Both the position numbers and the translations under genes were made by a program. The notes beneath the pieces are model-generated. The model searched no databases, was not told the DNA's origin, and worked only from the letters and a program-made list of their open reading frames with translations. A stretch of DNA of 64,000 bases from Octopus vulgaris (Eukaryota): NCBI GenBank assembly GCA_951406725.2, contig OX597826.1, forward strand, positions 3,162,001 through 3,226,000. Reading direction: 5' to 3'. Position 1 is the stretch's first letter. Each line of letters opens with the position of its first letter. This document shows positions 1,906 through 63,558 of this stretch, one piece after another.

Positions 1906-2520
1906 CATATACATACATATATATATACATACATATAAATGTATGACGGGCTTCTACCATATACATTTTTTTTATCCACTCTATCGGAACAATAGAACTG
2001 TATGATATATTAGTCCAGTACCTAAACTTAATATTTTTGTTTTACATGGCCGTATATAGCCTACAATTCCTTCGGGTTCCGTTACGTACTGGTGTACAGC
2101 TACTCAGATAATTGCCATTGCGCAATCTACTTTGACTACACAAATGATCGTAGCCCTGTGCGAATTGGGTACGGAAAACTTCCTTTTAGTTCTGCGTTTC
2201 TTAATGTCTCTGAGTATGTTAAGTAATAAGCATTATAATGCCTAGCACAGCTCTTTCTATATGATGTGCGCAAATATAAGACCCGACGTCCTGCGCATGT
2301 ACTGGTCTACATCTCTTTCAATCATTCTCCAAACACCTGCTATTATAAAGATTGTTCTGTTTTCAATCACCATTTTCGGGTTATACCATATCTTTGTTTT
2401 TGTTTTTATTTATATATCTTTTGGTTATTTGGAATTGGATAATTCCGTTTGCTCATTTTGTCTCATTTAGAGATATATCATAATCCGTTGGGACACATAT
2501 TTAGAGACCTCGACATCACT

Positions 2521-3003
2521 TCCGGTCCCCCTCCTTCTTCTTCTTTTTCTTCTTCTTCTTCTTCTTCTTCTTCTTCTTCTTCTCCTTCTTTCTTCTTCCT
2601 CTTCTACTTTTTCTTCTTCTCCTTCTTCTTCTTCTTCTTCTTCTTCTTCTTCTTCTTCTTTTTCTTCTCCTTCTTCTTTCTTTCTTCTTCTTCTTCTTCT
2701 TCTTCTTCTTCTTCTCCATTTTTCTTCTTCCTCTTCTTCTTTTCTTCTTCTTCTTCTCCTCCTCATACTCCTCCTCCTCCTCCTCCTCCTTCTTCTTCTT
2801 CTTCTTCTTCTTCTTCTACTTTGTCTTCTTTTTCTCCTCCCCTCCTCATCATTCTTCTTCTTCTTTCCTTTATTCGTCATCCTCCCCATCATCAACGTCG
2901 TCGTCGACATCATCGTCATAATCATCACCACCCCCATCACCACTACCACCACCACCACCACCACCACAACCACCACAACCACCACCACCACCACAATCAC
3001 CAT

Positions 3004-3034
<31 letters not shown>

Positions 3035-3081
3035 TTCCCCCTCTTCTTTTTTTATTCTTCTTCGTCTTACTATTATTATTA

Positions 3082-3136
<55 letters not shown>

Positions 3137-3290
3137 CATTATTATCATTATTATTATTATTATTATTATTGATGTTGCTCTTGTTTTGTTTTTATTATTA
3201 CCATCATTATTTTTTATACTACTGCTAGTAGTATTCATAGTAACGGCACTGCGATAGTGGTTGTGGAGATGGCGTTGGTGGCGGTCTATA
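2521..3290. repeat. Compound trinucleotide microsatellite (TTC/TCC/TCA/CAC/CAT/TTA/TTG/TGG blocks)
   Basis: Directly visible; it explains the poly-S/F/H/R/E/K pseudo-ORFs at 2449-3238. Confidence 0.97.
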
Positions 3291-9300: not shown

Positions 9301-9942
9301 ATGCTCTCACATCGTTTGTGGAAATGTGTGATTCAACAGACCACTATAATTCCGTATTCATTAGCTAAGTAGAAACGTATCCTCGATGGTGCAGAAAATT
9401 GAATTATTTTACGACTATTTTGTCCTCGATGTGTCTAGACCCATCTTTTCTATGTCTGTTGTCGTTTTGTTGAAATTGTCCAAATATAGCTTTCTATTAG
9501 TGATTGAGAAATTATTATTCCAAAGCAGAAATAGGTGAGTATCTACCTTGCAGCATATTAGGCATCTCTGATATTTACAGGTAATTTGGACTGCTATTAC
9601 TTCTGCTCCTCTTTCTCTACCTCTTCTGTTGCTACCTCTCTGTTTCTCCTCATTTTCCGCTACCACCTTTTCGTTTCAGAAAATATTTTCGTTTATGAAC
9701 AAAGGCACGCGGTTTCGTGTATAATGTATTGTATCACAGACGTTTACATAAGCAAGTACTTGTTTTTAATACATGTACACGGAATAGGGCACATATGTAA
9801 AGCACATATGGACAAATACATGCACATTCAGACGCACGCACAATCATAAACTGTAGGATAGATATCAGCGTATGTTTGTGCACATATAATTGTACACACA
9901 CAGAATTCCTCAAACATCCACACACCACAGTTACGCACGTAT

Positions 9943-10245
9943 ATATATGTCGTCTGGCGAATATGGAGGTTGGAGGAGAATCGTTTCTCGTTCAAAGTGC
10001 TCCAGCTTTGGATTGTTATCCTCGCTGTATGCAGCTGAGCATCATCCTGATGAAGGAACAACTTACGTCTTGAAACCAATCGTTGTTCGATGAATGGTTG
10101 AATAACCAAATCCAAGATCCTCTGCTAGTTCCTCAAAAGTTACGATGGGATTTCGTTCCACCAGGAATTGCAAGACCCCTCGTCGAGCTCTACAGATCTT
10201 TCCGAACGAAGATCGTTTTCTAGGCTGTAGTTGCCGGCTCGAAAT
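9943..10245 (-). pseudogene. Internally deleted mariner transposase remnant
   Basis: Minus-strand translation with frameshifts gives GNYSLENDLRS...VELDEGVLQFLVERNPIVTFEELAEDLGFGYSTIHR (second HTH region). This is fused directly to RLVSRRKLFLHQDDAQLHTARIT (HQDNA.PH motif) and PPYSPD (mariner YSPDL motif). Confidence 0.9.
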
Positions 10246-12061
10246 AGTCAGTCTGTACCAATGACCTGAGTAGTTGTCTGATATTTATTTTTGACGACGA
10301 AACCGAGAGAGGCAAAGTTACCCACAGTATATTTTGAACTTAAGATACAAAAAGCCAGTGAAATAAATACTACAACGTATTTTGCCTTCACTATTACCAA
10401 TCTGACAACTCACCACCTTTATACATGTACACATAAATGATCTTCATTTTATTTCCTACGTTATTTAAATACATTTGCACGTATTTTGCTACGTTTCCTT
10501 ATGTGTTTATTTGTTCGTATAATTTAATTTTGAAGAATAAGATGCTTTAAATTTCAAGCGTTATTTTTATGAATTCTCTATGTAGCGGAACGTGCGTTAT
10601 CATTCATAAGTTTGTCTCGATAGAACTTATGGGGAATGTTTGTGATTTTAATATCCATATTCCGAATATCACCATTTCTTAGCTTTCATATTTTCAATGT
10701 TTGTCAAATTTATTTTCAGTTACGTATATTGTGTGATATATAGAGAATTACATGAATTAATCCACGTAATTTCATTAAGTGAATTAGAATAATTTTGTTT
10801 CGTGACTTTGTTTTATTTAAACATTAGCTTGTTTACAAATCCTTTTTTTCCTTCCCTATTTCATGTTGTTACTTTTGTATATTTGTGGAGACCCTAAAAA
10901 TAGAATCTATGTATTTGAAAAATTAATATTTTGTGTTAATTTTTTCACCTTTTTATATTTTGTTAGGTATTTTGGCAAATTTAAAATCTGTATTTTATAT
11001 TAGCATTCTAGTTACAGAAGCCTCCCTACATCTGAGGATTTGTGAAGGATATAATCTTTCTGTATCAAGTTTTAGGTGGTGTGTTTTAAATGCTGGTCAT
11101 TATTTTCCTTACTCTTATCTTGTTCGGCGAAGTCGCTTTATATCCGTTACGCTATTATAGCAGCAATTACTAAGATAGTTAAAGCATTAATACATATAAC
11201 CTTTATCTGGTATCAAGCTTAGTTAATGTATTAATGTAATGTGTCTATAATATTTCTTCCCATTTTCTATCTATAACATAAATCTTAATTAACGATCTAC
11301 ATGAGAAAGTTGATTATTATCTTACAATTTTCGTAATCGGTCCATTGTGAGTTAGCCTGCTGGTTGTTCCGGTTTCATTGTTTTATTCTGTCCAGGTTAG
11401 TCCTGAGTAAAGAAGGGTAAGATCAAAGATAATCTAATATCAATGTTGTTCCATTGCTGAATTAGTATAATCCAAATAAGACTACATTATCCACTGCTTC
11501 TTTGAACGTACCTTCAAGACAATTCTGTGAAATTTCAAGTATATTTCACTTCTAGTTAATAGCAAGTTCAATCACACAAAGAAGGCACCTTATATATTTG
11601 AAAGTTGAAAGTGTTGGTATCACGCAATGAAAAAAGGAGCCGATTTTAAAGAAAGTGTAATCCCATTGAATATTACAATTGTAAAGGGAATGAATTATGT
11701 TTTAACCACTCAATCTTTCTTTCTCTTCGGATTTGTAAACTTTCGCATCCACATATTACGAGTCCGATTTACGATTATTTTACCTATGTTAAAATATTAA
11801 TCGTAATGTCTGCTTCTGATGTGTTCATGTCCACGATATAAATAGTTCCATATATTACCACTAGAAGTTTTGCGAATTTTGCTACCTTTTCAAACTCAGT
11901 ACAACATTATATATAAGGGTAGGTGTGTGTGTGTATGATATACATATATGCACAATGCCTTCTTTATATAAGCATATGCTATCTTAAATTAACTAGTCTA
12001 TGCCAATGGGAAGAAATTTGGAGGACATACTTGATTTCTCTCCTTATATTGGAATTCTCAT

Positions 12062-12476
12062 CGTCGAGCTGCAAAAGTCGATTAGCACCCAGGAGAAAAG
12101 GCTTAGCGGTATTTCGTCAGCCGTTACGTTCTGAGTTCAAATTCAGCCGTGGTCAACTTTGCCTTTCATCCTTTAGGGGTCGATTAAATAAGTACCAGTT
12201 ACGCACTGGGGTCGATGTAATCGACTTAATCCGTTTGTCTATGATTGTTTGTCCTCTCTGTGTTTAGTCTCTTGTGGGTAGTAAAGAAATAGGTATTTCG
12301 TCTGTCTTTATGTTCTGAGTTCAAATTCCACCGAGGTCGACTTTGCCTTTCATCCTTTCGGTGTTGATTAAACAAGTACCAGTTACGCAATGGGGTCGAT
12401 GTTATCGACTTAATCCGTCTGTCTGTCCTTCTTTGTCCCCTCTGTGTATAGCCCCTTGTGGGTAATAAAGAAATAA
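12062..12476 (+). mobile_element. SINE family A, tandem dimer (second unit lacks the A-box head)
   Basis: The B-box gagttcaaattc occurs twice (~12134 and ~12317). The body is repeated from ggtatttcgtc (~12108 and ~12292), with the tail gtgggtaataaagaaat. Confidence 0.9.
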
Positions 12477-12607
12477 GAAGCTTGCTTCCAAACTACATTG
12501 TTCCAGGTTCAGCCTCGTTGCATGTGACCTTGGGCTAGTTTCTTGGATTAAAGCGTAAGGCTAACCAAATCTTGTGGGTACATTTGGTAGACGGAAACTG
12601 AAATAAT

Positions 12608-12675
<68 letters not shown>

Positions 12676-12940
12676 ATATATATATATATATGTGTTTGTG
12701 TATGTGTGTCTGTGTCTTTGTCTGTGTGTATGTCTCTGTCTGCCTGCTTGACTGTGTTTGCCCCCCGTCATTGCCTGACAACCGACTTTGGTGTGTTTAC
12801 GTCCCCGTAAACTAGCGGGTCGGCAAAAGGTGGTCGATAGAATAGGTACTAGGCTTACAAAGAATAATCTCTGGGTTTGATGTCTTCCAAACCGGTGATC
12901 CAGCGAGGCCGCAGTCAAGTGACTGAAACAAGTAAAAGAA
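12474..12940 (+). mobile_element. SINE family B (5'-truncated head, internal (TA)n/(TG)n microsatellite, 3' tail)
   Basis: Reads aagaagcttgcttcc...ccttgggc...ggtagacggaaactgaaa, then the microsatellite, then the tail gtgtttacgtccccgtaa...gcagtcaagtgactgaaacaagtaaaaga. Multiple copies occur in the window. Confidence 0.85.
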
Positions 12941-14159
12941 TATATCTATACATGCCTATGTACTATATATGCATACTAACACACGCCTACCAACACACAC
13001 ACACATGCAGATACACGCACACTGAAACATACACGGGCACTAATACACAGATACATGCACCCAGCAACACACTCACGCACTTATACATCGACACCCTTCC
13101 TTCTATCTTCTGTGTTGTTCTTTTCTTGTTTTCATGTATACGAAGGAGCATGTATGCGATTTAAATGGGAATTCCTATACAAACGCACACGCACACACAG
13201 ACACACACACAAACACACTCAGAGGAACACACAAACCGCACATACAAATACGAGCACAAACACGCGCTTATGTATAAAGATATATAGACATACATCTCGT
13301 ATATTTATACAGGCAAAGGGTGTGAAAAACAGAGACGTGCACGCTGGCGTACAACTTCAGTTTGTGTGTAAGCGAGGATAAATGGAGGTTGGATTTCACA
13401 GTGTGACATTGGGTGTATGTAAGGATAAGTATATTTCTCTTAGAGAGCTTAAGACACAAAAACAACAGCCACTTATCAGATTTAGTCTTGAACACAGACT
13501 CACTCTAAATTTAATGTGAAGCTTCAGTTTTCTAAGAAATCAACAGAATATAAAACAATGTTATTTTAATATTTACCACAACTATTTCCCCTTTCTAAAG
13601 CTTGTAGTCAGTGAATACATTACCTTTAATACTTATCCGAAATAACATCTTAAAAAAACATCTTATGAACCTAAAATAACCGCACCCATTTTGCACCATA
13701 AATCAGGGATTTATTTTTTGTATTTCGTCGCCCGCCTTTCTGTCGGATTTTTTTCCTTGTTAGAAGTGGAGGAATGAACAATATTAAAAGACATCTTTAG
13801 AGATAACTGTGATTCAGATACAAATTATCATTTATACACGCATCCCTAAATAAAACAAATGTGTTTTGGATATGTGAGAGTTTCTACATTCATGCATAGA
13901 TTAATCCCTATATGTTGCGACTGGGTCTGTATATTTTTGATCGTTGGCAGATATGAAAATGCATATAAATATATAGAGGCACATACGCACACAAAGACAT
14001 ACACAGACACACACAAGCCTATATATATATATATATATACATACATACACACACACACACATATATATATATATATGCATGTATTTGTATGTATATATAT
14101 GTATATACATATATGCATGTATTTGTACATATATATATTTATACATATATACATGTTTT

Positions 14160-14207: not shown

Positions 14208-14490
14208 GAGACACATGGCCTAGTGGTTAGAGCAGCTTATTCGTGGTCGAGGTATCGCGGGTTTGAATTTCAGACCGGGTGATGTGTGTGATTATGAGCG
14301 AAACAGCTAAGCTCCACGCGGCTCCGGCAGAAGGTTATGGTTAACTTCTGCTGACTCTTTCACCACAACTTTCTCCCACTCTTTCCTCCTGCATCTTCCA
14401 GCTCACCTGCGATGGACCGGCGTCCCGTCCAGGTGGGGAACCTATACGACAAGGAAACCGAGAAACCGGCCCTATGCTCCACAAGGGGAA
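14207..14490 (+). mobile_element. tRNA-derived SINE family C
   Basis: A-box TGGCCTAGTGG (14216-14226) and B-box-like GGTTTGAATTTC. The body is homologous to the copies at 44872-45060 and 57450-57759. Confidence 0.9.
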
Positions 14491-15084
14491 AAAAGGATTA
14501 AGAAGAAGAAATGTATGTATATATATGTTTGCATGCATATATATATATGTATATATATTTGTATATGTATACTTGTATATATAGGTTTTCCACATTAGGT
14601 TGGTAGGGATATACATTCCTAGCGGGTACCGTATTCTCTTTTACCGGTTATGTATGTGTAGAAATGAAAAGACGTGATTGACTGCAGAATAAAACTGGAT
14701 AAATAAATCTCTATTCTCCTAATTATTATACGTATGTATATATGCTCGTTTGTATGTATGTATGCCTCTTCTGTTCTCGATCATTTAAATTTTTACTGTG
14801 AAGAAACAGCTGGTTTCTAACAAAGATATAAAACTTCGTCTTTGGAATGTAGACAAGGAAAATAATGTTATATTTTAAAACCGAAAAAGCCTTGCATTGT
14901 TTTACTGTTCCTCTTACAAACTGTATTTGTAATATGCGAATCGGCTGATATCTTTTCCTGAGAATCCTAGCTTATCTAGACTGATAGTTAAGGATTTACT
15001 TACAAAACCAAGTTACCCCAATTATTATTGGTATAAATATCAATTTTGTAATCCGGTTATGAATGTATGTATGTACATGTACGT

Positions 15085-17432: not shown

Positions 17433-17482
<50 letters not shown>

Positions 17483-17486
<4 letters not shown>

Positions 17487-17670
17487 GTTAAATTATAGAT
17501 AAAACCACTATTAGGCAAATCAAACAATGAAAAACATAAGCCAATACATAAAATTAATTAATTCATATTATTTAAATATATATCAAAAGTATTAAAAGTA
17601 ATAAAAGATAAAAAGTAAAACACTATGATCGTTTCATGGCTGTACAATTCGTAATAATTCGAGTTATGGT

Positions 17671-17672: not shown

Positions 17673-17714
<42 letters not shown>

Positions 17715-17765
17715 GTGAAGGGAAGAAATGGAGCTGAACGAAGATTCTACAGAATTCCTTTTATT

Positions 17766-17851
17766 ATTTTCTACACATGTTTCAAAGGCCGCAAATTTCC
17801 AAATTCGGATTGAATAAGGAGACCATTTTGCAGCATTCTCTTCAGGAAAAT
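17766..17851 (-). ncRNA. Type I hammerhead ribozyme motif (left arm)
   Basis: Reverse-complement copy of 17958-18042; all core nucleotides are intact. Confidence 0.75.
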
Positions 17852-17957
17852 CCAGGAATTTAAAAATCCAAAACAAATGCGCAGCAAGGTATTCTCCTAA
17901 GGAGCGTTTTGTTCGAATACCTTGCTGCGCATTTGTTTTGGATTTTTAAATTCCTGG

Positions 17958-18042
17958 ATTTTCCTGAAGAGAATGCTGCAAATGGTCTCCTTATTCAATC
18001 CGAATTTGGAAATTTGCGGCCTTTGAAACATGTGTAGAAAAT
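17958..18042 (+). ncRNA. Type I hammerhead ribozyme motif with long stem II (right arm)
   Basis: Stem I is ATTTTC/GAAAAT (6 bp), core CTGAAGA 17964-17970, stem II contains GCTGCAAAT/ATTTGCGGC, then GAAA 18025-18028. Stem III is AC-atgt-GT, with a GUA cleavage triplet (cut predicted after 18036). Confidence 0.78.
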
Positions 18043-18252
18043 AATAAAAGGAATTCTGTAGAATCTTCGTTCAGCTCCATTTCTTCCCTTCACTAAATAT
18101 ATTAAACTTCAATTATCCGCGCTAAGGCACGGTTGTGACACCCCAAGGTCGTAACTTCAACCGTAATTTTTCTGTTGTGATTTTTGCTACCCAGGTATCG
18201 GTTAAATTTTGAATAATCCTTAACAAGATAATTCATTTATCCATTTCAATAA

Positions 18253-19228: not shown

Positions 19229-19726
19229 AATCAAGGAACGGCCATAATAGGCCATTCACCCACTAGAAATAACAGCCAAAGCTTCAACCACTATATATAT
19301 ATTCTTTACTCTCTTTTACTCTTTTGCTTGTTTCAGTCATTTGACTGTGGCCTTACTGGAGCACCGCCTTTTGTCGACCAAATCGACCGCAGGACTTATT
19401 CTCTGTAACCCTGGTACGTATTCTATCGCTCTCTTTTGCCGAATCGCTAAGTCATGGGGATGTAAACACACCAGTATTGGTTGACAAGCGATGTTTGGGG
19501 ACAAACACAGACACACAAACATATTCATACGCACACACACACACATATATATATACAATTTGATTTGTTTACATATTTCTCGATAAATTATGAGCGCCAG
19601 GCGATATACCAGAATTCCCTAGTTTTGTCGGGACGTTCGGAGTCTGCGCAGTGATATGATTAGTTAGGGAGAGTAAATCATTAGACGCACATGCTTCTAG
19701 TGAGTTAGGATCCCAGAAAAACAGGG

Positions 19727-19798
19727 TCTCACTGAAGAATTCTCCCTGAGCAAATAAATTATCTTTATTGCTGAAAAGAAAGAAACTGCAGTCTGAGA
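19727..19798 (+). ncRNA. Type I hammerhead ribozyme motif, unit 1
   Basis: Stem I is TCTCA/TGAGA, core CTGAAGA 19732-19738, stem II TTCT/AGAA plus AGCAA(A)TAAA/TTTATTGCT, then GAAA 19782-19785. Stem III is AC-tgca-GT with a palindromic loop, and the triplet is GUC (cut predicted after 19793). Confidence 0.85.
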
Positions 19799-20122
19799 AT
19801 TACCGGTTTAGTAAATGTTTTTATCTTCATTTCACTTAATTTATCAAGCTTCTGTATTCCTAGCACATATTTCGCCTTAATGTACTGATATATGAAAAAT
19901 ATATGGCTTGTGTTAGTAATACCAGCGATTATAATTATTTTTATTTTATCGCAATTTGATTTGTTTACATATTTCTCGATAAATTATGAGCGCCAGGCGA
20001 TATACCAGAATTCCCTAGTTTTTTCGGGACGTTCGGAGTCTGCGCAGTGATATGATTAGTTAAGGAGAGTAAATCATTAGACGCACATGCTTCTAGTGAG
20101 TTAGGATCCCAGAAAAACAGGG

Positions 20123-20194
20123 TCTCACTGAAGAATTCTCCCTGAGCAAATAAATTATCTTTATTGCTGAAAAGAAAGAAACTGCAGTCTGAGA
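20123..20194 (+). ncRNA. Type I hammerhead ribozyme motif, unit 2
   Basis: Identical to unit 1, 396 bp downstream; cut predicted after 20189. Confidence 0.85.
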
Positions 20195-20554
20195 ATCACC
20201 GGTTTAGTAAATGTTTTTATCTTCATTTCACTTAATTTATCAAGCTTCTGTATTCCTAGCACATATTTCGCCTTAATGTACTGATATATGAAAAATATAT
20301 GGCTTGTGTTAGTAATACCAGCGATTATAATTATTTTTATTTTATCGCAATTTGATTTGTTTATATATATATATATATATATATATACGACGGGCTTCTT
20401 TCAGTTTCAGTCTACCAAATCCACTCACAAGGCTTTGGTCGGCCCGAGGCTATAGTGGAAGACACTCACCCAAGGTGCCACGTAGTGGGACTGAACCCGG
20501 AACCATGTGGTTCTTTAGCAAGTTACTTACCACAAAGCCATTCCTACGCCAATA

Positions 20555-20613
<59 letters not shown>

Positions 20614-42300: not shown

Positions 42301-43380
42301 CTAATATTTTTGGTTTGTTAATTTTTCGTCTTTATTTGCTCCCTTTTCATACAAAATTTTCCTGTATATGATTACGATAATCACAAGCAGTTCTTCATAA
42401 AGGTTCTTCTTATCTTAAACAGTTCTGTTCTTAATAGGATTAGGATTATCATAAATAGTTCTTCATAAATGTTTGACGATACTTATCTTCGCAAAACTTT
42501 CATTTCCTGGTGCCCTCACAAATCTTTTCTGTGTTCTGCTATTTAGTTTCAAATGATAAAGTATTCTTAGAGAGAGACTTGGCTGCAATATATTGTAATC
42601 AGAAGAACTGTGCGAACAGTTCTAATAATGATAGAAACAATCGCCATACTTAAAGACTGTATGTACTATAGAAAAGTATTCGACCTTCAGGCTATCGCTG
42701 CAGCTGTCTTGTATTAGCGGGAATTGAGAAAAATGTTTTCGACTTTTAATTAAATGTTCAAATAGTAAAACAAAACAAAAGTTCGTAAAAATTGGTGTAG
42801 TTGGTTACGATGGTACAAATATTTGCATTCAACAATTTTGTACTTCGTAAGTATCAAATACAAATTGCAAATTGAGATGAACAAAATGTTTCCGTTTTAT
42901 AAACTGTAGTTTGCGTGTGTGTGTGTGTGTGTGAGTGTGTGTGTATGTGTGTATGTGTGTGTGTGCGTGTGTGTGTGTTGGGTGTATGGATGGATGTTAA
43001 TGATTTGGTAATGTTGGGCGTAGGAGTGGATGGAAATGATTTGACTTCTCCTCTGTAACTATATAAAATGTTAACCAGTCACTCAGGTGCGTAACCATTT
43101 GCAATGAGTTAAATTACATATGGTAAAAACAAAAAAGAGAAATATTGTTTCATTTTTAACTGAATGAATTCACACAATTAATATTCTAATGCTGTATATT
43201 ATTAACACAGTCGTTCTGCACTTACACTCTTTCGGGGCTTATTGCGCTCAGTTCAAAGTTGATTAATACAGTCGTAACCTTTCCCATAGATACTACGTTT
43301 ACGCTTTGAATGGGATTTATGAATCCCCTACTGTTGGCATATGCTTCTTACTGGCAGGTATCTGAGCACCTTTGATTAGC

Positions 43381-43838
43381 GCTTCTTCTTCTTCTTCTTC
43401 TTCTTCTTCTTCTTCTTCTTCTTCTTCTTCTACTTCTTCCTCTTCTTCTTCTGCTTCCCCTTCCTCCTCCTCCTCCTCATCATCATCATCATCATCCCCT
43501 TCCTCCTCCTCCACCCTCTTCTACTTCTTCTTCTTCTTCTGCTTCTTCTTCTTTTTCTTCTTCTTCTTCTTCTTCTGCTTCTACTTCTTCCTCTTCTTCT
43601 TCTTCTTCTCCTCCTCCTCTCATCATCATCATCATCATCCCTTCCTCCTCCTCCACCTCTTCTCTTCTTCTTCTTCTTCTTCTTCTTCCTTCTTCCTCTT
43701 CTTCTTCTTCTTCTTTCTTCCTCTTCGTCTCCTCCTCCTTCTCCTCCTCCTCCTCCTATCCTCATAATCATCATCATCATCATCATCCCCTTCCTCCTCA
43801 TCCTCCTCCCTCTTCTTCTGCTTCCTCTTCTTCTTCTT
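43381..43838. repeat. Compound TTC/TCC/TCA microsatellite with ~140-150-bp higher-order periodicity
   Basis: The motif (tca)n-tccc(c)ttcc(tcc)n...ctcttct recurs at ~43492, ~43634 and ~43783. Confidence 0.85.
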
Positions 43839-44871
43839 GAACAGATGGAATTAAATAGGAACAAATAATAACCTTAAACGACAGCAACTAACTGTATTCT
43901 ATTTATTTCCCCCAATATTCGTCCAAAGGATATCAGTGGAGACATATTTCGATACCATTTCTTCTTAGATACAAGCACCGGTATTGGAGGGATTTTTTTT
44001 TTAATTGTAAAGACAATGTTACATAATTCAGGTTGATAAAGATACGATACACATAAATGAGGCTCTTTGTCCCGTAACCTCTAAATCCATACACTTCCAC
44101 AGAAGCACACTCACACATATATACATGGATACGTACAAATGTACAAACATATCTACATATGTACATAAACTCACACAAACAGACACGCATACATAGAAGC
44201 TAACACAAACACGTCTGTATACATATGTGTGTGTGTGTATGTGATTGCGTGTGTGTGTGTGTGTTATGCTTGCAATATTAATGAATAATTAATAAGCTGG
44301 CTCAATAATTGTTTTCCTAATTAAATGGAAATATTTATTTCTTCTTCCTTCACAAATTTGATGATTTACTAGGCGTAATTATAAAGCAATCATATAATGA
44401 GTATTTGTCAACTTATCGAATAATAAGAGGTTTTCAATGTTGTATTTCACTTCTCATATGACAGACAAAAATAAGAACTAGTGACTGGAGGTCGTAAGTA
44501 ACTACTACATAATATATTAGTATAGTGTGAAATGGTGATCACTAAAGGAATTGGTCAACATTATATGAATTAAGGTGTTTTTTAGGTCATCATTGATTGT
44601 GAACTAGAAATGTTGTTCATTTCGTTATTTCTGTTTCAGTTGATTGGTGTATTTACAATATACGTTGTAATGCATTTAAAATATGTCTGATGCCGACTGT
44701 ACTTTTACAGGACAAAGAAGAAACAAACAGACCAAAGAAACATTCATTTAGGGTCTATGAGTGCTGCACGGTTATGAGCATATATCACCGTGATCACCCT
44801 GACCGACCAGGCTATCAGATGTTGCTACACATCACTGGTCACAATGCGCTTCGCATTGTTTTAGCCTTCAA

Positions 44872-47547: not shown

Positions 47548-47601
<54 letters not shown>

Positions 47602-47785
47602 ATAAATATTAGGGAATAAATCCAAATTTACAGGGAAAAATCAGATTTAGGATTGAATCCAATTTTATAGTAAAATATAATATAATATTAATTAGAGACA
47701 AAACCACTATTATGCAAATCAAACAAAGAAAGACTTAATCCAATACATAAAAAATTTTTATATAAATTAAATATAATTAAGATAT

Positions 47786-47831
47786 CCACTACGATCGTTT
47801 CTTGTCACTTCAATGGACATTCATCAGGTGG
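47786..47831 (-). ncRNA. Minimal type I hammerhead ribozyme motif (left arm)
   Basis: Exact reverse complement of 48069-48114. Confidence 0.82.
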
Positions 47832-48068
47832 TTTCAAGACCTAAAATATAATCAATATTTTTAAGATATAAATTTGAAATGACTAATATAAAATATAAAA
47901 TTATCAATGAAAATATATATAATCAAGAACTAACATAACCTCTATAAACGATTGTATATAATGAAACCTTGTATTTAAATTCTCATATTTAAAGATGAAA
48001 TAGCTAATTTCAAAAAACAAAAAACAAAAAATATCTTTAAAATAGTGATTATATTTTAGGTCTTGAAA

Positions 48069-48114
48069 CCACCTGATGAATGTCCATTGAAGTGACAAGA
48101 AACGATCGTAGTGG
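48069..48114 (+). ncRNA. Minimal type I hammerhead ribozyme motif (right arm)
   Basis: CCAC-CTGATGA-A-TGTC-cattgaagt-GACA-A-GAAA-C-gatc-GTA-GTGG has a palindromic stem III loop; cut predicted after 48110. Confidence 0.85.
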
Positions 48115-48205
48115 ATATCTTAATTATATTTAATTTATATAAAAAAATGTTATGTATTGGATTAAGTCTTTCTTTGTTTGATTTGCATAATAGTGGTTTT
48201 GTGTC

Positions 48206-48272
<67 letters not shown>

Positions 48273-53520: not shown

Positions 53521-53679
53521 AAATATAACATTTTTTTTTAAATCGCTAGAATATGGTAGGTGTTCGCTCCCGTGCGTCTAATGTATGAGAAACCCATAAG
53601 TTTAGGTGGCACTATGGGACTATATACGAGAAATTAGCTATCCAAATAGAATATTCCCCTTTTCTGCGAACATACAACG

Positions 53680-53900
53680 ATTTGGGGATATTTCTGTCCA
53701 TGACGACGTATTGTTGAAAACATGGCATGATGTATCCTTCAAGTCAACACCCGAGGACTTCTACTGTCAAAGCATTCGCAAGTTAATAGATTGTTTTCAA
53801 GAAGTCGTGAACTATGAAGGTAAAATATTATTGACCGATTTAAAAAAAAATTGAACATGGATTAAAATGAACGAAAACTTAACGATATTCACACAAACCA
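53680..53900 (+). pseudogene. Mariner transposase C-terminal remnant
   Basis: LKTWHDVSFKSTPEDFYCQSIRKLIDCFQEVVNYEGK matches the mariner C-terminal FF.SKP.DFY..GI.KL..RWQ.V...EG.Y pattern. Confidence 0.8.
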
Positions 53901-57076: not shown

Positions 57077-57449
57077 GGTAGCGTATGTATCCCAATCGCT
57101 GGCATGACTCTGTTTTTGACAACCACGCTTTGCAAACATGTGATTAGTTTTACTGATGGTATTGAGTTGACTGTCTTTCGATTTTAACGGCTTTTTCATA
57201 TCGGTAGATAAGCCGTTAAATGACTGGACGAATAAGTCGCTAAAAGTGGAATTATTGGGTTAACAGATAAAGTCTTTCTTGTTTTCCCATTTATTTTAAT
57301 CCTTATGCTTAACAACACTTTTAACAAATCACTCAACGATATATTCGCCTTCATCGTTCACGATTTCTTGCCGATGTTACTCTAACGTGTCAATATCCTG
57401 TCGATAGAATTCTGCTTTCTTGACCCGTTCCACCTTTTTCATCTCTGAG

Positions 57450-57759
57450 TCGTTGTTTGTTTGTTCCTTGTCGAGTCATGCATGGCTCATAAGGGCCGGT
57501 TTCCCGCTTTCTTGGCGTATAGGTTCCCCACCTGGACGGGACGCCGGTCCGTCGCAGGTGATTTTCAAGATGCAGGAGGAAAGAGTGAGAGAAAGTTGTG
57601 GCGAAAGAGTCAGCAGAAGTTTCGCCATTACCTTCTGCCGGAGCTGCGTGGAGCTTAGGTATTTTCGCACATAAACACACGCATCGCCCGGTCTGAGATT
57701 CGAACCCGCGATCCCTCGACCGTGAGTTCGCTGCTCTAACCACTAGGCCATGTGCCTCC
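57450..57759 (-). mobile_element. tRNA-derived SINE family C, near full length
   Basis: The minus strand has A-box TGGCCTAGTGG and consensus B-box GGTTCGAATC; the tail ends in (AAAC)n. Confidence 0.93.
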
Positions 57760-58289
57760 GCTTTGTGTCGTTGTAGAGTGAAACGTGTTGCAAACTGTTC
57801 GAAAGCAAACAAAATGGATGGCAGTTTGAAGGAACATTACCAAGAGAATACGGTGGCTGTAATAGAAGTTCTCACCGAGATTTCGAAGGCTATTTTCGGA
57901 CTCAGTATCAGCGTGGTGCCTTGCTGTTGCGTTAAGGAAACAAGGCATTTACGGGTCAGGTTGTATGATCCTTAACCATTCAGCGAAGGTGACACGCAAC
58001 GTTATCATGAAAGTGTCCGGAGCGTAGGAGTGTCTGTGATATCTCTTTCTTCAATCATGAAAACCATTTCAGTAATGGCACCTTGCGCTAATAGATCAAA
58101 CATGTCTAAAGCAGCTTTGGCAGATTTCGGGCATTGACTGAAAGCAAAGACAAGTGTCTCTGGTATGTTAATTTTTTGTCTAAATGACACACGAAGAGAG
58201 GTGACATTTTATTCAAATTTTTAAGAATGGTAATGGAAATATGGAGTAACAAAACTGTAAAACCTCTCGAAAAATATTATCTTCTTACA

Positions 58290-63252: not shown

Positions 63253-63558
63253 ACAACAAGGAGTAGGATCTCCACTGCAGAACGAAGAGCAATTGAAACA
63301 GTTCAGAGAAGCAATTTCTATGAAGCAGCTTTCGATTATAACCCAGCAGTTTCTTCTGCAGATGACACTGGTGTTTCCATTGGTGCAATGAAAACTGATT
63401 TCATACGTTGTAAAGGAAGGAAGTGTCCAGGAGAAACACCTGCACTGCACTGCAGTGGTAGAAAGGATAAACTCCCTGCAATACACCAACCTCCAGAACC
63501 ATTGAACCACATATATATTAGAGTGCGCATAAAGTTACTAAGACCAGATATTTAGGGC
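63253..63558 (+). pseudogene. Helitron RepHel N-terminal region remnant
   Basis: The stop-to-stop frame reads ...RRAIETVQRSNFYEAAFDYNPAV...VSIGAMKTDFIRCKGRKCPGETPALHCSGRKDKLPAIHQPPEPLN. This resembles the AF.YDP...IG.M...C..C.A.K...E..G.CC..GKV.LP....PPEPL block upstream of the Helitron_like_N domain. Confidence 0.8.

What the first reader, a model, noticed from the sequence alone, without database searches (positions are those of the whole stretch)
19556..20363. Candidate octopus retrozyme: 396-bp tandem units each carrying an intact hammerhead, predicting a self-excising (circular) RNA
Seen: two head-to-tail 396-bp units plus 16 nt, differing at three positions, none inside the ribozyme. 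They sit in the TA-type microsatellite of a SINE. Each unit has a complete type I HHR (CUGAAGA, GAAA, GUC, 5-bp stem I, long stem II, palindromic ACUGCAGU stem III). Established: tandem ~150-450-nt repeats with a type I HHR define metazoan non-LTR retrozymes, which self-cleave to monomers and form circRNAs. PLE-associated HHRs with short palindromic stem III cleave as dimers. Inference: read-through transcription would release a 396-nt monomer (19794-20189). The 2.04-unit length, starting out of register with the cut site, fits reverse transcription around a circle. I do not know of a description in cephalopods; novelty needs a literature and Dfam/Repbase check.
Basis: partly seen in the sequence, partly recalled or inferred. 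Interest (0 to 1): 0.85.

Follow-up and report, generated by a model that had tools for sequence, protein, structure and literature searches.

The report
Hammerhead-bearing tandem retroelement in a microsatellite
An 808-base insert made of two near-identical 396-base units, each carrying a hammerhead-ribozyme-like motif, sits in the TA microsatellite of an older repeat; it looks like a retrozyme or Penelope-dependent element, a kind already known from many invertebrates including mussels.

Summary
There are 2.04 head-to-tail copies of a 396-bp unit (19556-20363) with three differences, inserted in the (TA)n tract of an interspersed SINE-like repeat whose other copies lack the insert.

Each unit carries a type I hammerhead-like motif:
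- CUGAAGA and GAAA boxes
- a 5-bp helix I
- an 8-nt palindrome ACUGCAGU at helix III
- C17 at 19793 and 20189

The hammerhead is not fully canonical. Helix II closes with an A·A opposition instead of G10.1-C11.1. Rfam Hammerhead_1 reaches 21.2 bits against a threshold of 34, and only when a ~100-nt slice is searched.

A chance motif is very unlikely. My descriptor expects 0.005-0.017 hits per shuffled window. It finds six hits in three unrelated repeat families, all next to (TA)n. Two isolated motif copies fold into a double hammerhead as the minimum-energy dimer.

The best reading is a non-coding, Penelope-dependent retrozyme-type element. Transcription, cleavage and a 396-nt circle are inferred, not shown. 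The 2.04-unit length does not separate a circular template from a linear multimer. No other copy of the unit could be retrieved, and the organism could not be verified.

This is a new member of a known kind, of moderate-to-low interest.

The parts
19556..19951 (+). Unit 1 of the 396-bp tandem repeat
   Evidence: TRF period 396; alignment of the units
19952..20347 (+). Unit 2, 99.2% identical to unit 1 (differences at 19627/20023, 19667/20063, 19801/20197)
20348..20363 (+). Start of a third unit, a 'tail' of 16 nt (CAATTTGATTTGTTTA). The boundary is ambiguous up to 20368 because it runs into (TA)n.
19727..19798 (+). Hammerhead-like motif 1: helix I 19727-31/19794-98; CUGAAGA 19732-38; helix II region 19739-81 (A·A, then UUCU/AGAA, internal loop, 9-bp distal stem, loop UUAUC); GAAA 19782-85; palindrome ACUGCAGU 19785-92; C17 at 19793 (predicted cut after 19793)
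   Evidence: Sequence; own descriptor; Rfam Hammerhead_1 19726-19799, 21.2 bits, full model length, E 0.0028 in a 96-nt search, below gathering 34
20123..20194 (+). Hammerhead-like motif 2, identical letters; predicted cut after C20189
19794..20189 (+). Predicted 396-nt monomer between the two cut sites (inferred product, not observed)
   Evidence: Follows from the two C17 positions. Linear fold z -0.79; circular fold z -0.82, 62% paired
19534..19555 (.). Left flank: (CA)n then (TA)n microsatellite of the host repeat
20364..20387 (.). Right flank: (TA)n microsatellite. No target-site duplication can be read because both flanks are TA repeats.
19300..19533 (-). 3' half of the interrupted interspersed SINE-like repeat
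   Evidence: Paralogous copies in the window; uninterrupted copy 12474-12942
20388..20555 (-). 5' half of the same repeat. It has a B-box-like GGTTCCGGGTTCAGTCCC on the minus strand; ARAGORN does not call it a tRNA.

Best explanation
The 808-bp block is one insertion of a short, non-coding retroelement of the animal 'non-LTR retrozyme' or Penelope-associated hammerhead kind. It landed in the internal (TA)n tract of an older SINE-like repeat.

**Shown**
- Two and a bit head-to-tail 396-bp units.
- An empty site in paralogous SINE copies.
- A hammerhead-like motif in each unit, on the + strand, with all core boxes, a 5-bp helix I and an 8-nt self-complementary helix III.
- A predicted preference for a double hammerhead formed by two copies.

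**Inferred**
- A + strand transcript that spans both units pairs the two motifs. Helix III pairs 19785-92 with 20181-88. Helix I forms crosswise between the copies.
- That transcript is cut after C19793 and C20189.
- A Penelope-like reverse transcriptase/endonuclease, which prefers (TA)n targets, copies more than one unit length into new sites.

The ribozyme is a variant: A·A in place of G10.1-C11.1 and a long irregular helix II. I therefore expect cleavage, if any, to be slow and dimer-dependent. The SINE's own promoter points the wrong way, so + strand transcription must come from elsewhere.
For: - **Tandem structure:**
- **Insertion into (TA)n of a repeat whose other copies lack it:**
- **No coding capacity:** the longest ORF is 52 aa with no homologue.
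- **Composition:** GC is 34.6%, within the low-GC range given for animal retrozymes (PMC7229834).
- **Motif anatomy:**
- **Rfam:** a full-length Hammerhead_1 alignment at exactly the predicted place, 21.2 bits.
- **Chance expectation:** 0.017 and 0.005 hits per window for the two descriptors, against 4 hits (two families) with the first and 6 hits (three families) with the second.
- **Features the descriptors did not ask for:** all three families share C15.2/G16.2, and all lie beside (TA)n, which covers only 5.5% of the window. The full 8-nt helix III palindrome, not demanded by the first descriptor, is present in families A and B.
- **Dimer folding:** cofolding two motif copies gives the double hammerhead as the MFE, -30.1 against 2 x -12.7 kcal/mol. 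In the 531-nt tandem transcript the double form is 9 kcal/mol better than two monomeric hammerheads.
- **Literature fit:**
  - tandem 150-450 bp repeats with type I hammerheads, and mussel repeats of 350-390 bp (PMC7229834)
  - palindromic short helix III and dimer cleavage (PMC4209133)
  - (TA)n bias, partial tandems and short terminal 'tails' of Penelope-like elements (PMC8557442)
  - recently active Penelope families reported in Octopus vulgaris (PMC13282606)
Against: - No Rfam hammerhead hit at the gathering score or in a 1.3-kb E-value search. 21.2 bits would give E of about 2 over the whole window.
- G10.1-C11.1, which Cervera & de la Pena list as highly conserved even in minimal Penelope hammerheads (PMC4209133), is replaced by A·A.
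- Only one locus is available, so there is no covariation and no copy number.
- The monomer is not unusually structured, and the double hammerhead lies 10.4 kcal/mol above the MFE of the tandem transcript.
- There is no evidence of transcription, and no Penelope ORF in the window.
- In the one Penelope element studied in vitro, hammerhead cleavage was not needed for insertion, and RNA-seq showed no reads ending at the cut site (PMC11167929).
Confidence: 0.7

Rival explanations
1. Same class of element, but no circle is involved. A linear, unprocessed multimeric transcript from a donor tandem array was copied by a Penelope-type enzyme that starts reverse transcription inside the RNA. This gives two units plus a short tail. 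The hammerhead is dispensable for this insertion.
For: - In vitro, a Penelope element starts reverse transcription at internal sites. This explains the genomic 'tail', and hammerhead mutants insert equally well (PMC11167929).
- The insert is a whole number of units plus 16-21 nt, which resembles that tail signature.
- The two units differ at three positions. That is expected if the template was a dimer from a heterogeneous array, though later mutation explains it too.
Against: - The published tail is 30-40 bp; this one is 16-21 nt.
- Nothing in the sequence excludes a circular template.
- Published retrozymes do accumulate as circles (PMC7229834).
Confidence: 0.3
2. A dead relic. The unit descends from a hammerhead-bearing element, but the ribozyme is inactive because the G10.1-C11.1 pair is lost and helix II is disrupted. 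The array produces no processed RNA.
For: - Sub-threshold Rfam score, with helix II not aligned.
- A·A at 10.1/11.1.
- The strict descriptor fails.
- Low in vitro activity is reported even for well-formed Penelope hammerheads (PMC4209133).
Against: - The same A·A followed by a 4-bp helix recurs in the unrelated family C motif (48073-48110). That looks like a shared variant rather than random decay.
- All 11 invariant core letters are intact in both units.
- The units are only 0.76% diverged, so the insert is young.
Confidence: 0.25
3. Chance motif in a local tandem duplication or minisatellite, or an assembly duplication. On this reading there is no ribozyme biology at all.
For: - Only 2.04 copies at one locus.
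- No Rfam hit at the curated threshold.
- The descriptor was relaxed after seeing the sequence.
Against: - The expected number of descriptor hits per window is 0.005-0.017.
- The relaxed descriptor then found two further, unrelated repeat families with the same architecture, both beside (TA)n.
- The whole block is an insertion relative to paralogous SINE copies, not a duplication of resident sequence.
- Three differences between the units argue against a trivial assembly repeat.
Confidence: 0.05

Closest known systems
Metazoan non-LTR retrozymes (Cervera & de la Pena 2020, PMC7229834), especially the Mytilus galloprovincialis repeats of 350-390 bp
   Same: - Head-to-tail repeats of a few hundred bp.
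- Low GC and no ORF.
- One type I hammerhead per unit.
- A mollusc precedent whose hammerheads also lack the classical loop-loop contacts.
- Penelope-like elements are the proposed mobilisers.
   Different: - Here there are only 2.04 units at one known locus.
- Helix II is long and irregular, with A·A at its base.
- Helix III is of the weak palindromic type, whereas the paper says most invertebrate retrozyme hammerheads cleave well as monomers.
- The predicted circle is not unusually self-paired.
- There are no expression data.
Minimal hammerheads of Penelope-like elements (Cervera & de la Pena 2014, PMC4209133; Lunse et al. 2017, known to me only through citations)
   Same: - Short helix I (4-5 bp) and longer helix II.
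- An extra nucleotide after A9.
- Palindromic 15.2-16.2 segment and predicted dimer cleavage.
- (TA)n insertion bias, partial tandems and tails of the host elements (PMC8557442).
- Pairs of motifs on opposite strands 100-700 bp apart, as seen for families B and C in this window.
   Different: - No RT/EN ORF lies between the repeats, so this is not a pLTR of a full element.
- The G10.1-C11.1 pair that those authors found highly conserved is absent.
Newt satellite 2 and axolotl retrozyme hammerheads
   Same: Tandem ~330-350 bp units. The weak helix III makes cleavage depend on two copies forming a double hammerhead (PMC7229834, PMC6155905).
   Different: Those are present in 10^5 copies and were shown to be transcribed and circularised. 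Neither is known here.
Rfam RF00163 Hammerhead_1
   Same: A full-length alignment to the model: helix I, CUGAnGA, GAAAC, a 4+4 loopless helix III, and UC.
   Different: The score is 21.2 bits against a gathering score of 34. The model's helix II is skipped and replaced by a 43-nt insert.

Membership tests
Animal non-LTR retrozyme | Head-to-tail repeats of about 150-450 bp, at least two consecutive units | tested here: met
   396 bp x 2.04. Also found with the TRF settings of Li et al. 2026.
Animal non-LTR retrozyme | A complete type I hammerhead in every unit | tested here: inconclusive
   Core boxes, helix I, helix III and C17 are present in both units. However, there is A·A at 10.1/11.1, the strict descriptor fails, and Rfam gives 21.2 bits, below the gathering score of 34.
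Animal non-LTR retrozyme | Low GC (<45-50%), no protein-coding capacity, no LTR/PBS/PPT | tested here: met
   GC is 34.6%. The longest ORF is 52 aa without homologues. I saw no terminal repeats other than the units themselves.
Animal non-LTR retrozyme | Dispersed multicopy family (mobile) | tested here: inconclusive
   There is one locus in the window, and no hits in the metagenome or prokaryote-genome scans. No eukaryotic genome collection is available. Mobility is shown only by the empty site in paralogous SINE copies.
Animal non-LTR retrozyme | Unit RNA predicted to be highly self-paired | tested here: not met
   Linear z is -0.79. Circular z is -0.82 with 62% paired. This is a descriptive trait in the papers, not a strict criterion.
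Animal non-LTR retrozyme | Transcribed, self-cleaved and accumulated as linear and circular monomers | not testable with these tools
   No RNA data or wet assay is available.
Penelope-like element hammerhead (min-HHR) | Short helix I, palindromic 15.2-16.2 or loop 3, predicted dimer activity | tested here: met
   5-bp helix I and ACUGCAGU. The double hammerhead is the MFE of two copies.
Penelope-like element hammerhead (min-HHR) | Nucleotide between A9 and 10.1, followed by a conserved G10.1-C11.1 | tested here: not met
   An A follows A9, but it faces another A before G12. The first real pair is U-A. Family C has the same arrangement and family B has G·U.
Penelope-like element hammerhead (min-HHR) | Located in pseudo-LTRs flanking an RT/GIY-YIG ORF | tested here: not met
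   There is no ORF over 52 aa in or between the units. No RT or EN domain was found among the ten most protein-like of the window's longer reading frames (>=70 aa).
Penelope-like element insertion signature | Microsatellite, especially (TA)n, targets; partial tandems; short terminal tail | tested here: met
   Both junctions are in (TA)n, which covers 5.5% of the window. The insert is 2 units plus a 16-21 nt tail. This is a resemblance to PMC8557442 and PMC11167929, not proof of the enzyme involved.

The most novel reading that the evidence does not exclude
This genome, probably a cephalopod's, carries a lineage-specific hammerhead variant. An A·A opposition replaces G10.1-C11.1 and helix II is extended. 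On this reading the variant is catalytically active as a dimer, is shared by several unrelated Penelope-dependent non-coding elements, and produces abundant ~400-nt circular RNAs. The (TA)n junctions and the tail of this insert would then be direct target-site evidence that animal retrozymes are mobilised by Penelope-like enzymes.
Probability: 0.25. Interest if true: 0.55.

Novelty: new member of a known kind. Interest (0 to 1): 0.35.

Why it matters
If it is real and active, it would extend retrozyme-type circular RNA biology to the group this window comes from. That group is probably the cephalopods; there, the papers I could search report only a count of Rfam hammerhead hits.

It would also give a clean case of a more-than-unit-length retrozyme insert with an identifiable empty site and Penelope-like target choice. 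That bears on the still-inferred link between animal retrozymes and Penelope-like elements.

The recurring A·A next to the catalytic core would be a small but testable point about how much variation the hammerhead core tolerates. None of this changes the general picture, because such elements are already known to be widespread in invertebrates.

Tried and rejected
**Searches that found nothing useful**
- Rfam at gathering score on the whole window gave no hits.
- An Rfam E-value search on 19300-20600 gave no hammerhead. The sub-threshold matches appeared only in ~100-nt slices. Family C gave none even then.
- There is no other copy of the unit in the window.
- Exact-pattern scans for the family A hammerhead in metagenome contigs and prokaryote genome contigs gave 0 hits.
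- I tried to fish out more DNA of the same genome with a SINE 20-mer. The one hit was a chance match in a 49% GC contig.
- I tried to reach other copies through translated ORFs. The unit's 52-aa ORF and the SINE-derived 92-aa ORF both had no homologue.
- An exact look-up of a 140-aa window ORF found nothing on record.
- Pfam on the ten most protein-like reading frames found nothing. So there is no Penelope RT in the window and no handle on the organism.
- ARAGORN called no tRNA in the SINE head.
- The supplement of the Octopus vulgaris repeat paper holds no sequences.
- Lunse et al. 2017 is not held in the library.

**Readings considered and rejected for the 396-bp array**
- Helitron: there are no TC...CTRR ends.
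- MITE or DNA transposon: there are no terminal inverted repeats.
- A coding gene: there is no ORF.
- A ribozyme on the minus strand: neither the descriptor nor Rfam finds one.

**Test discarded as circular**
- Counting covariation across families A, B and C is circular, because the descriptor selected them for pairing.

Full report
**1. The observation**

Tandem Repeats Finder reports a 396-bp period, 2.1 copies, 99% matches and no indels at 19556-20368. The TRF settings of a recent retrozyme survey give the same result.

Aligning unit 1 (19556-19951) with unit 2 (19952-20347) gives exactly three differences, at unit positions 72, 112 and 246. The array then continues for 16 nt (CAATTTGATTTGTTTA) before it dissolves into (TA)n.

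The unit has 34.6% GC. Its longest ORF is 52 aa, with no homologue in the large protein collection. No second copy of the unit exists in the 64-kb window.

**2. It is an insertion**

The block is flanked on the left by (CA)n(TA)n and on the right by (TA)n. Outside these lie two halves of an interspersed repeat, 19300-19505 and 20388-20555.

That repeat has at least seven other partial copies in the window at 72-84% identity. In the copy at 12474-12942 the two halves are joined by nothing but microsatellite. The 808 bp therefore arrived later, inside the repeat's TA tract.

- No target-site duplication can be read, because both junctions are TA repeats.
- The repeat has a B-box-like GGTTCCGGGTTCAGTCCC on the minus strand, but ARAGORN does not call a tRNA.
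- From memory the repeat resembles the abundant octopus SINE. I could not test this, because no collection available here holds cephalopod DNA.

**3. The hammerhead motif**

Both units carry identical letters:

| Element | Unit 1 coordinates |
|---|---|
| Helix I, UCUCA with UGAGA | 19727-31 / 19794-98 |
| CUGAAGA | 19732-38 |
| Helix II region | 19739-81 |
| GAAA | 19782-85 |
| Palindrome ACUGCAGU | 19785-92 |
| C17 | 19793 |

In unit 2 everything is shifted by 396, so C17 is at 20189.

As a single hairpin, helix III can form only A-U and C-G around a UGCA loop. Between two copies it forms 8 bp.

Helix II is not canonical. A19739 faces A19781 where G10.1-C11.1 is expected. Then come UUCU/AGAA, a 5x4 internal loop, a 9-bp distal stem with one bulge, and a UUAUC loop.

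Rfam results:
- No hammerhead at the gathering score on the whole window.
- None at E<=10 on 1.3 kb.
- In a 96-nt slice, where the filters are laxer, Hammerhead_1 aligns full length (1-45/45) to 19726-19799 at 21.2 bits, E 0.0028 for that slice, against a gathering score of 34. The model's helix II is skipped in favour of a 43-nt insert.

Scaled to the whole window, that E-value would be about 2. On its own it is not significant.

**4. Is the motif chance?**

I wrote two descriptors.

- **Descriptor 1** requires a 5-bp helix I, CUGANGA, the first five helix II positions, GAAA, a helix III of at least 2 bp, a non-G at position 17, and helix I closure.
  - With no helix II mismatch allowed it finds nothing.
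  - With one mismatch allowed it finds both units.
  - The relaxed version gives 5 hits in 300 dinucleotide shuffles of the window, both strands, or 0.017 per window.
- **Descriptor 2** requires a self-complementary helix III and allows a 4-bp helix I. It gives 2 hits in 400 shuffles, or 0.005 per window.

The relaxation was made after seeing the sequence, so these numbers flatter the motif. However, the same descriptors then found motifs I had not looked for.

**5. Two more hammerhead-bearing repeat families in the window**

- **Family B** is a perfect inverted repeat, 17706-17894 / 17915-18102, next to (TA)n.
  - On the + strand it has AUUUUC / CUGAAGA (17964) / a 54-nt helix II / GAAA (18025) / ACAUGUGU / A18036 / GAAAAU.
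  - The mirror image lies on the - strand.
  - Rfam Hammerhead_1 aligns full length at 20.4 bits.
- **Family C** is an inverted repeat, 47680-47869 / 48031-48220, 95% complementary, between (CA)n(TA)n and (TA)n.
  - It has CCAC / CUGAUGA (48073) / A-UGUC...GACA-A / GAAA (48099) / ACGAUCGU / A48110 / GUGG.
  - Rfam gives no hammerhead hit for it, so it rests on my descriptor alone.
  - Shorter or decayed family C copies lie at 17474-17668, 1570-1758 and 1180-1300, all ending at (TA)n.

The three families share no sequence outside the core. They do share features the descriptors did not demand:
- C15.2 and G16.2 in all three families
- position beside (TA)n, which covers only 5.5% of the window
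- in families A and B, found by the first descriptor, a full 8-nt helix III palindrome where only 2 bp were demanded
- in families A and C, the same A·A opposition followed by a 4-bp helix

This is the kind of argument Cervera and de la Pena used for minimal Penelope hammerheads (PMC4209133). It makes a chance origin of the family A motif very unlikely.

**6. Folding**

- A single 78-nt motif prefers a non-hammerhead fold: -12.7 kcal/mol, against -6.5 for the hammerhead fold.
- Two copies cofold into the textbook double hammerhead as the minimum-energy dimer, at -30.1 kcal/mol. The 8-bp helix III forms between copies and helix I forms crosswise.
- In a 531-nt transcript that spans both motifs (19700-20230), the MFE is -113.9 kcal/mol. 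Enforcing the double hammerhead costs 10.4 kcal/mol. Enforcing two monomeric hammerheads costs 19.3.
- The dimer is therefore clearly the better catalytic fold, but it is not the ground state. That is common for ribozymes embedded in longer RNAs and neutral as evidence.
- The predicted 396-nt product (19794-20189) is no more stable than shuffles: z -0.79 linear and -0.82 circular with 62% paired. The minus strand scores z -2.58. Published retrozyme circles are described as highly self-paired (PMC7229834), so this trait is not met.

**7. Comparison with what is known**

- Animal non-LTR retrozymes are tandem 150-450 bp, low-GC, non-coding repeats with one type I hammerhead per unit. [quoted passage not shown] In the mussel the repeats are 350-390 bp, and their hammerheads lack the classical loop contacts (PMC7229834).
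- Penelope-like elements carry minimal hammerheads with a short helix I, a longer helix II, an extra nucleotide after A9, a conserved G10.1-C11.1 and a palindromic helix III. These are thought to act as dimers and have low activity in vitro. Pairs of motifs on opposite strands 100-700 bp apart are reported (PMC4209133).
- Penelope-like elements insert preferentially in microsatellites including (TA)n. They form partial tandems and inverted copies and often carry a short terminal tail (PMC8557442).
- For one element, reverse transcription starts at internal sites of the RNA. This explains the tail, and hammerhead cleavage was not required in vitro (PMC11167929).
- Penelope-like elements are proposed as the mobilisers or ancestors of animal retrozymes (PMC7761336; Li et al. 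2026 preprint).
- Octopus vulgaris is reported to hold 30 recently active Penelope families (PMC13282606).
- The giant squid genome paper lists 235 Rfam Hammerhead_1 hits (PMC6962438).
- I found no paper that describes retrozymes in cephalopods.

**8. What I conclude**

Family A meets the structural definition of a non-LTR retrozyme: tandem, in the right size class, low GC, non-coding, with one hammerhead-like motif per unit.

Three reservations apply:
- The ribozyme deviates at 10.1/11.1 and in helix II, and it stays below Rfam's threshold.
- Only one locus is known.
- The RNA is not unusually structured.

Its junctions carry a Penelope-like signature: a (TA)n target, a whole number of units, and a short tail.

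The most likely mechanism is the published retrozyme cycle, with dimer-dependent cleavage after C19793 and C20189. Every step after DNA structure is inferred.

A linear multimer copied with internal initiation gives the same product. The three differences between the units fit either later mutation or a heterogeneous donor array.

The SINE's own polymerase III promoter would transcribe the minus strand, which has no ribozyme. So + strand transcription needs another source.

**9. Verdict**

This is a real feature, correctly spotted and reasonably classified, but less canonical and less novel than claimed. It is a new member of a known kind. Interest is 0.35.

The decisive steps are a genome-wide copy and covariation survey, a look for back-splice and cleavage-site reads, and in vitro cleavage of one-unit and two-unit transcripts.

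Noticed in passing
window 17706-18102: Family B is a near-perfect inverted repeat (arms 17706-17894 and 17915-18102, 20-nt spacer) beside (TA)n. Each arm carries a hammerhead-like motif; on the + strand this is CUGAAGA 17964, GAAA 18025, cut after A18036. Rfam Hammerhead_1 scores 20.4 bits (gathering 34). The strong Rfam 'miRNA' hits here are just the long hairpin.
   Followed up: partly
window 47600-48250: Family C is an inverted repeat (47680-47869 / 48031-48220, 95%) between microsatellites. It has a canonical CUGAUGA box, the same A·A at 10.1/11.1 as the finding, the palindrome ACGAUCGU and a 4-bp helix I. There is no Rfam hammerhead hit. The left arm extends about 80 nt further than the right (47600-47680), which suggests alternative ends.
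   Followed up: partly
window 17474-17668, 1570-1840, 1180-1300: Shorter or decayed copies of family C keep the outer (3') end and abut (TA)n. The copy at 17474-17668 retains GAAACGATCATAGTG but has lost the CUGAUGA box. The 1180-1760 region is itself a large AT-rich inverted structure.
   Followed up: partly
window 12108-12475: This is the only other long-period tandem repeat in the window: 184 bp x 2.0, 87% matches. It lies next to a copy of the SINE-like repeat. No hammerhead motif was found in it.
   Followed up: no
window 14311-14595 and 57393-57836: A second interspersed repeat family shows up as similar reading frames (…SADSF(A/T)TTFSHSFLLHL…GVPSRWGTYT…) on opposite strands. It has no Pfam match.
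   Followed up: no
window 9831-10284 (-), 53606-53851 (+), 63253-63552 (+): Degenerate reading frames that by eye resemble mariner-type transposase and Helitron N-terminal fragments. Pfam finds nothing at E<=0.01.
   Followed up: partly
whole window: The microsatellite load is very high: 135 (TA)n tracts of at least 10 bp cover 5.5% of the window. There are also long (CA)n and (TAG)n tracts (20555-20613) and purine/pyrimidine-rich tracts (2449-3238, 43372-43864). Overall GC is 32.9%.
   Followed up: no
window 19794-20189, minus strand: The complement of the predicted monomer folds more stably than shuffles (z -2.58), while the ribozyme-sense strand does not (z -0.79). I have no explanation for this.
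   Followed up: no
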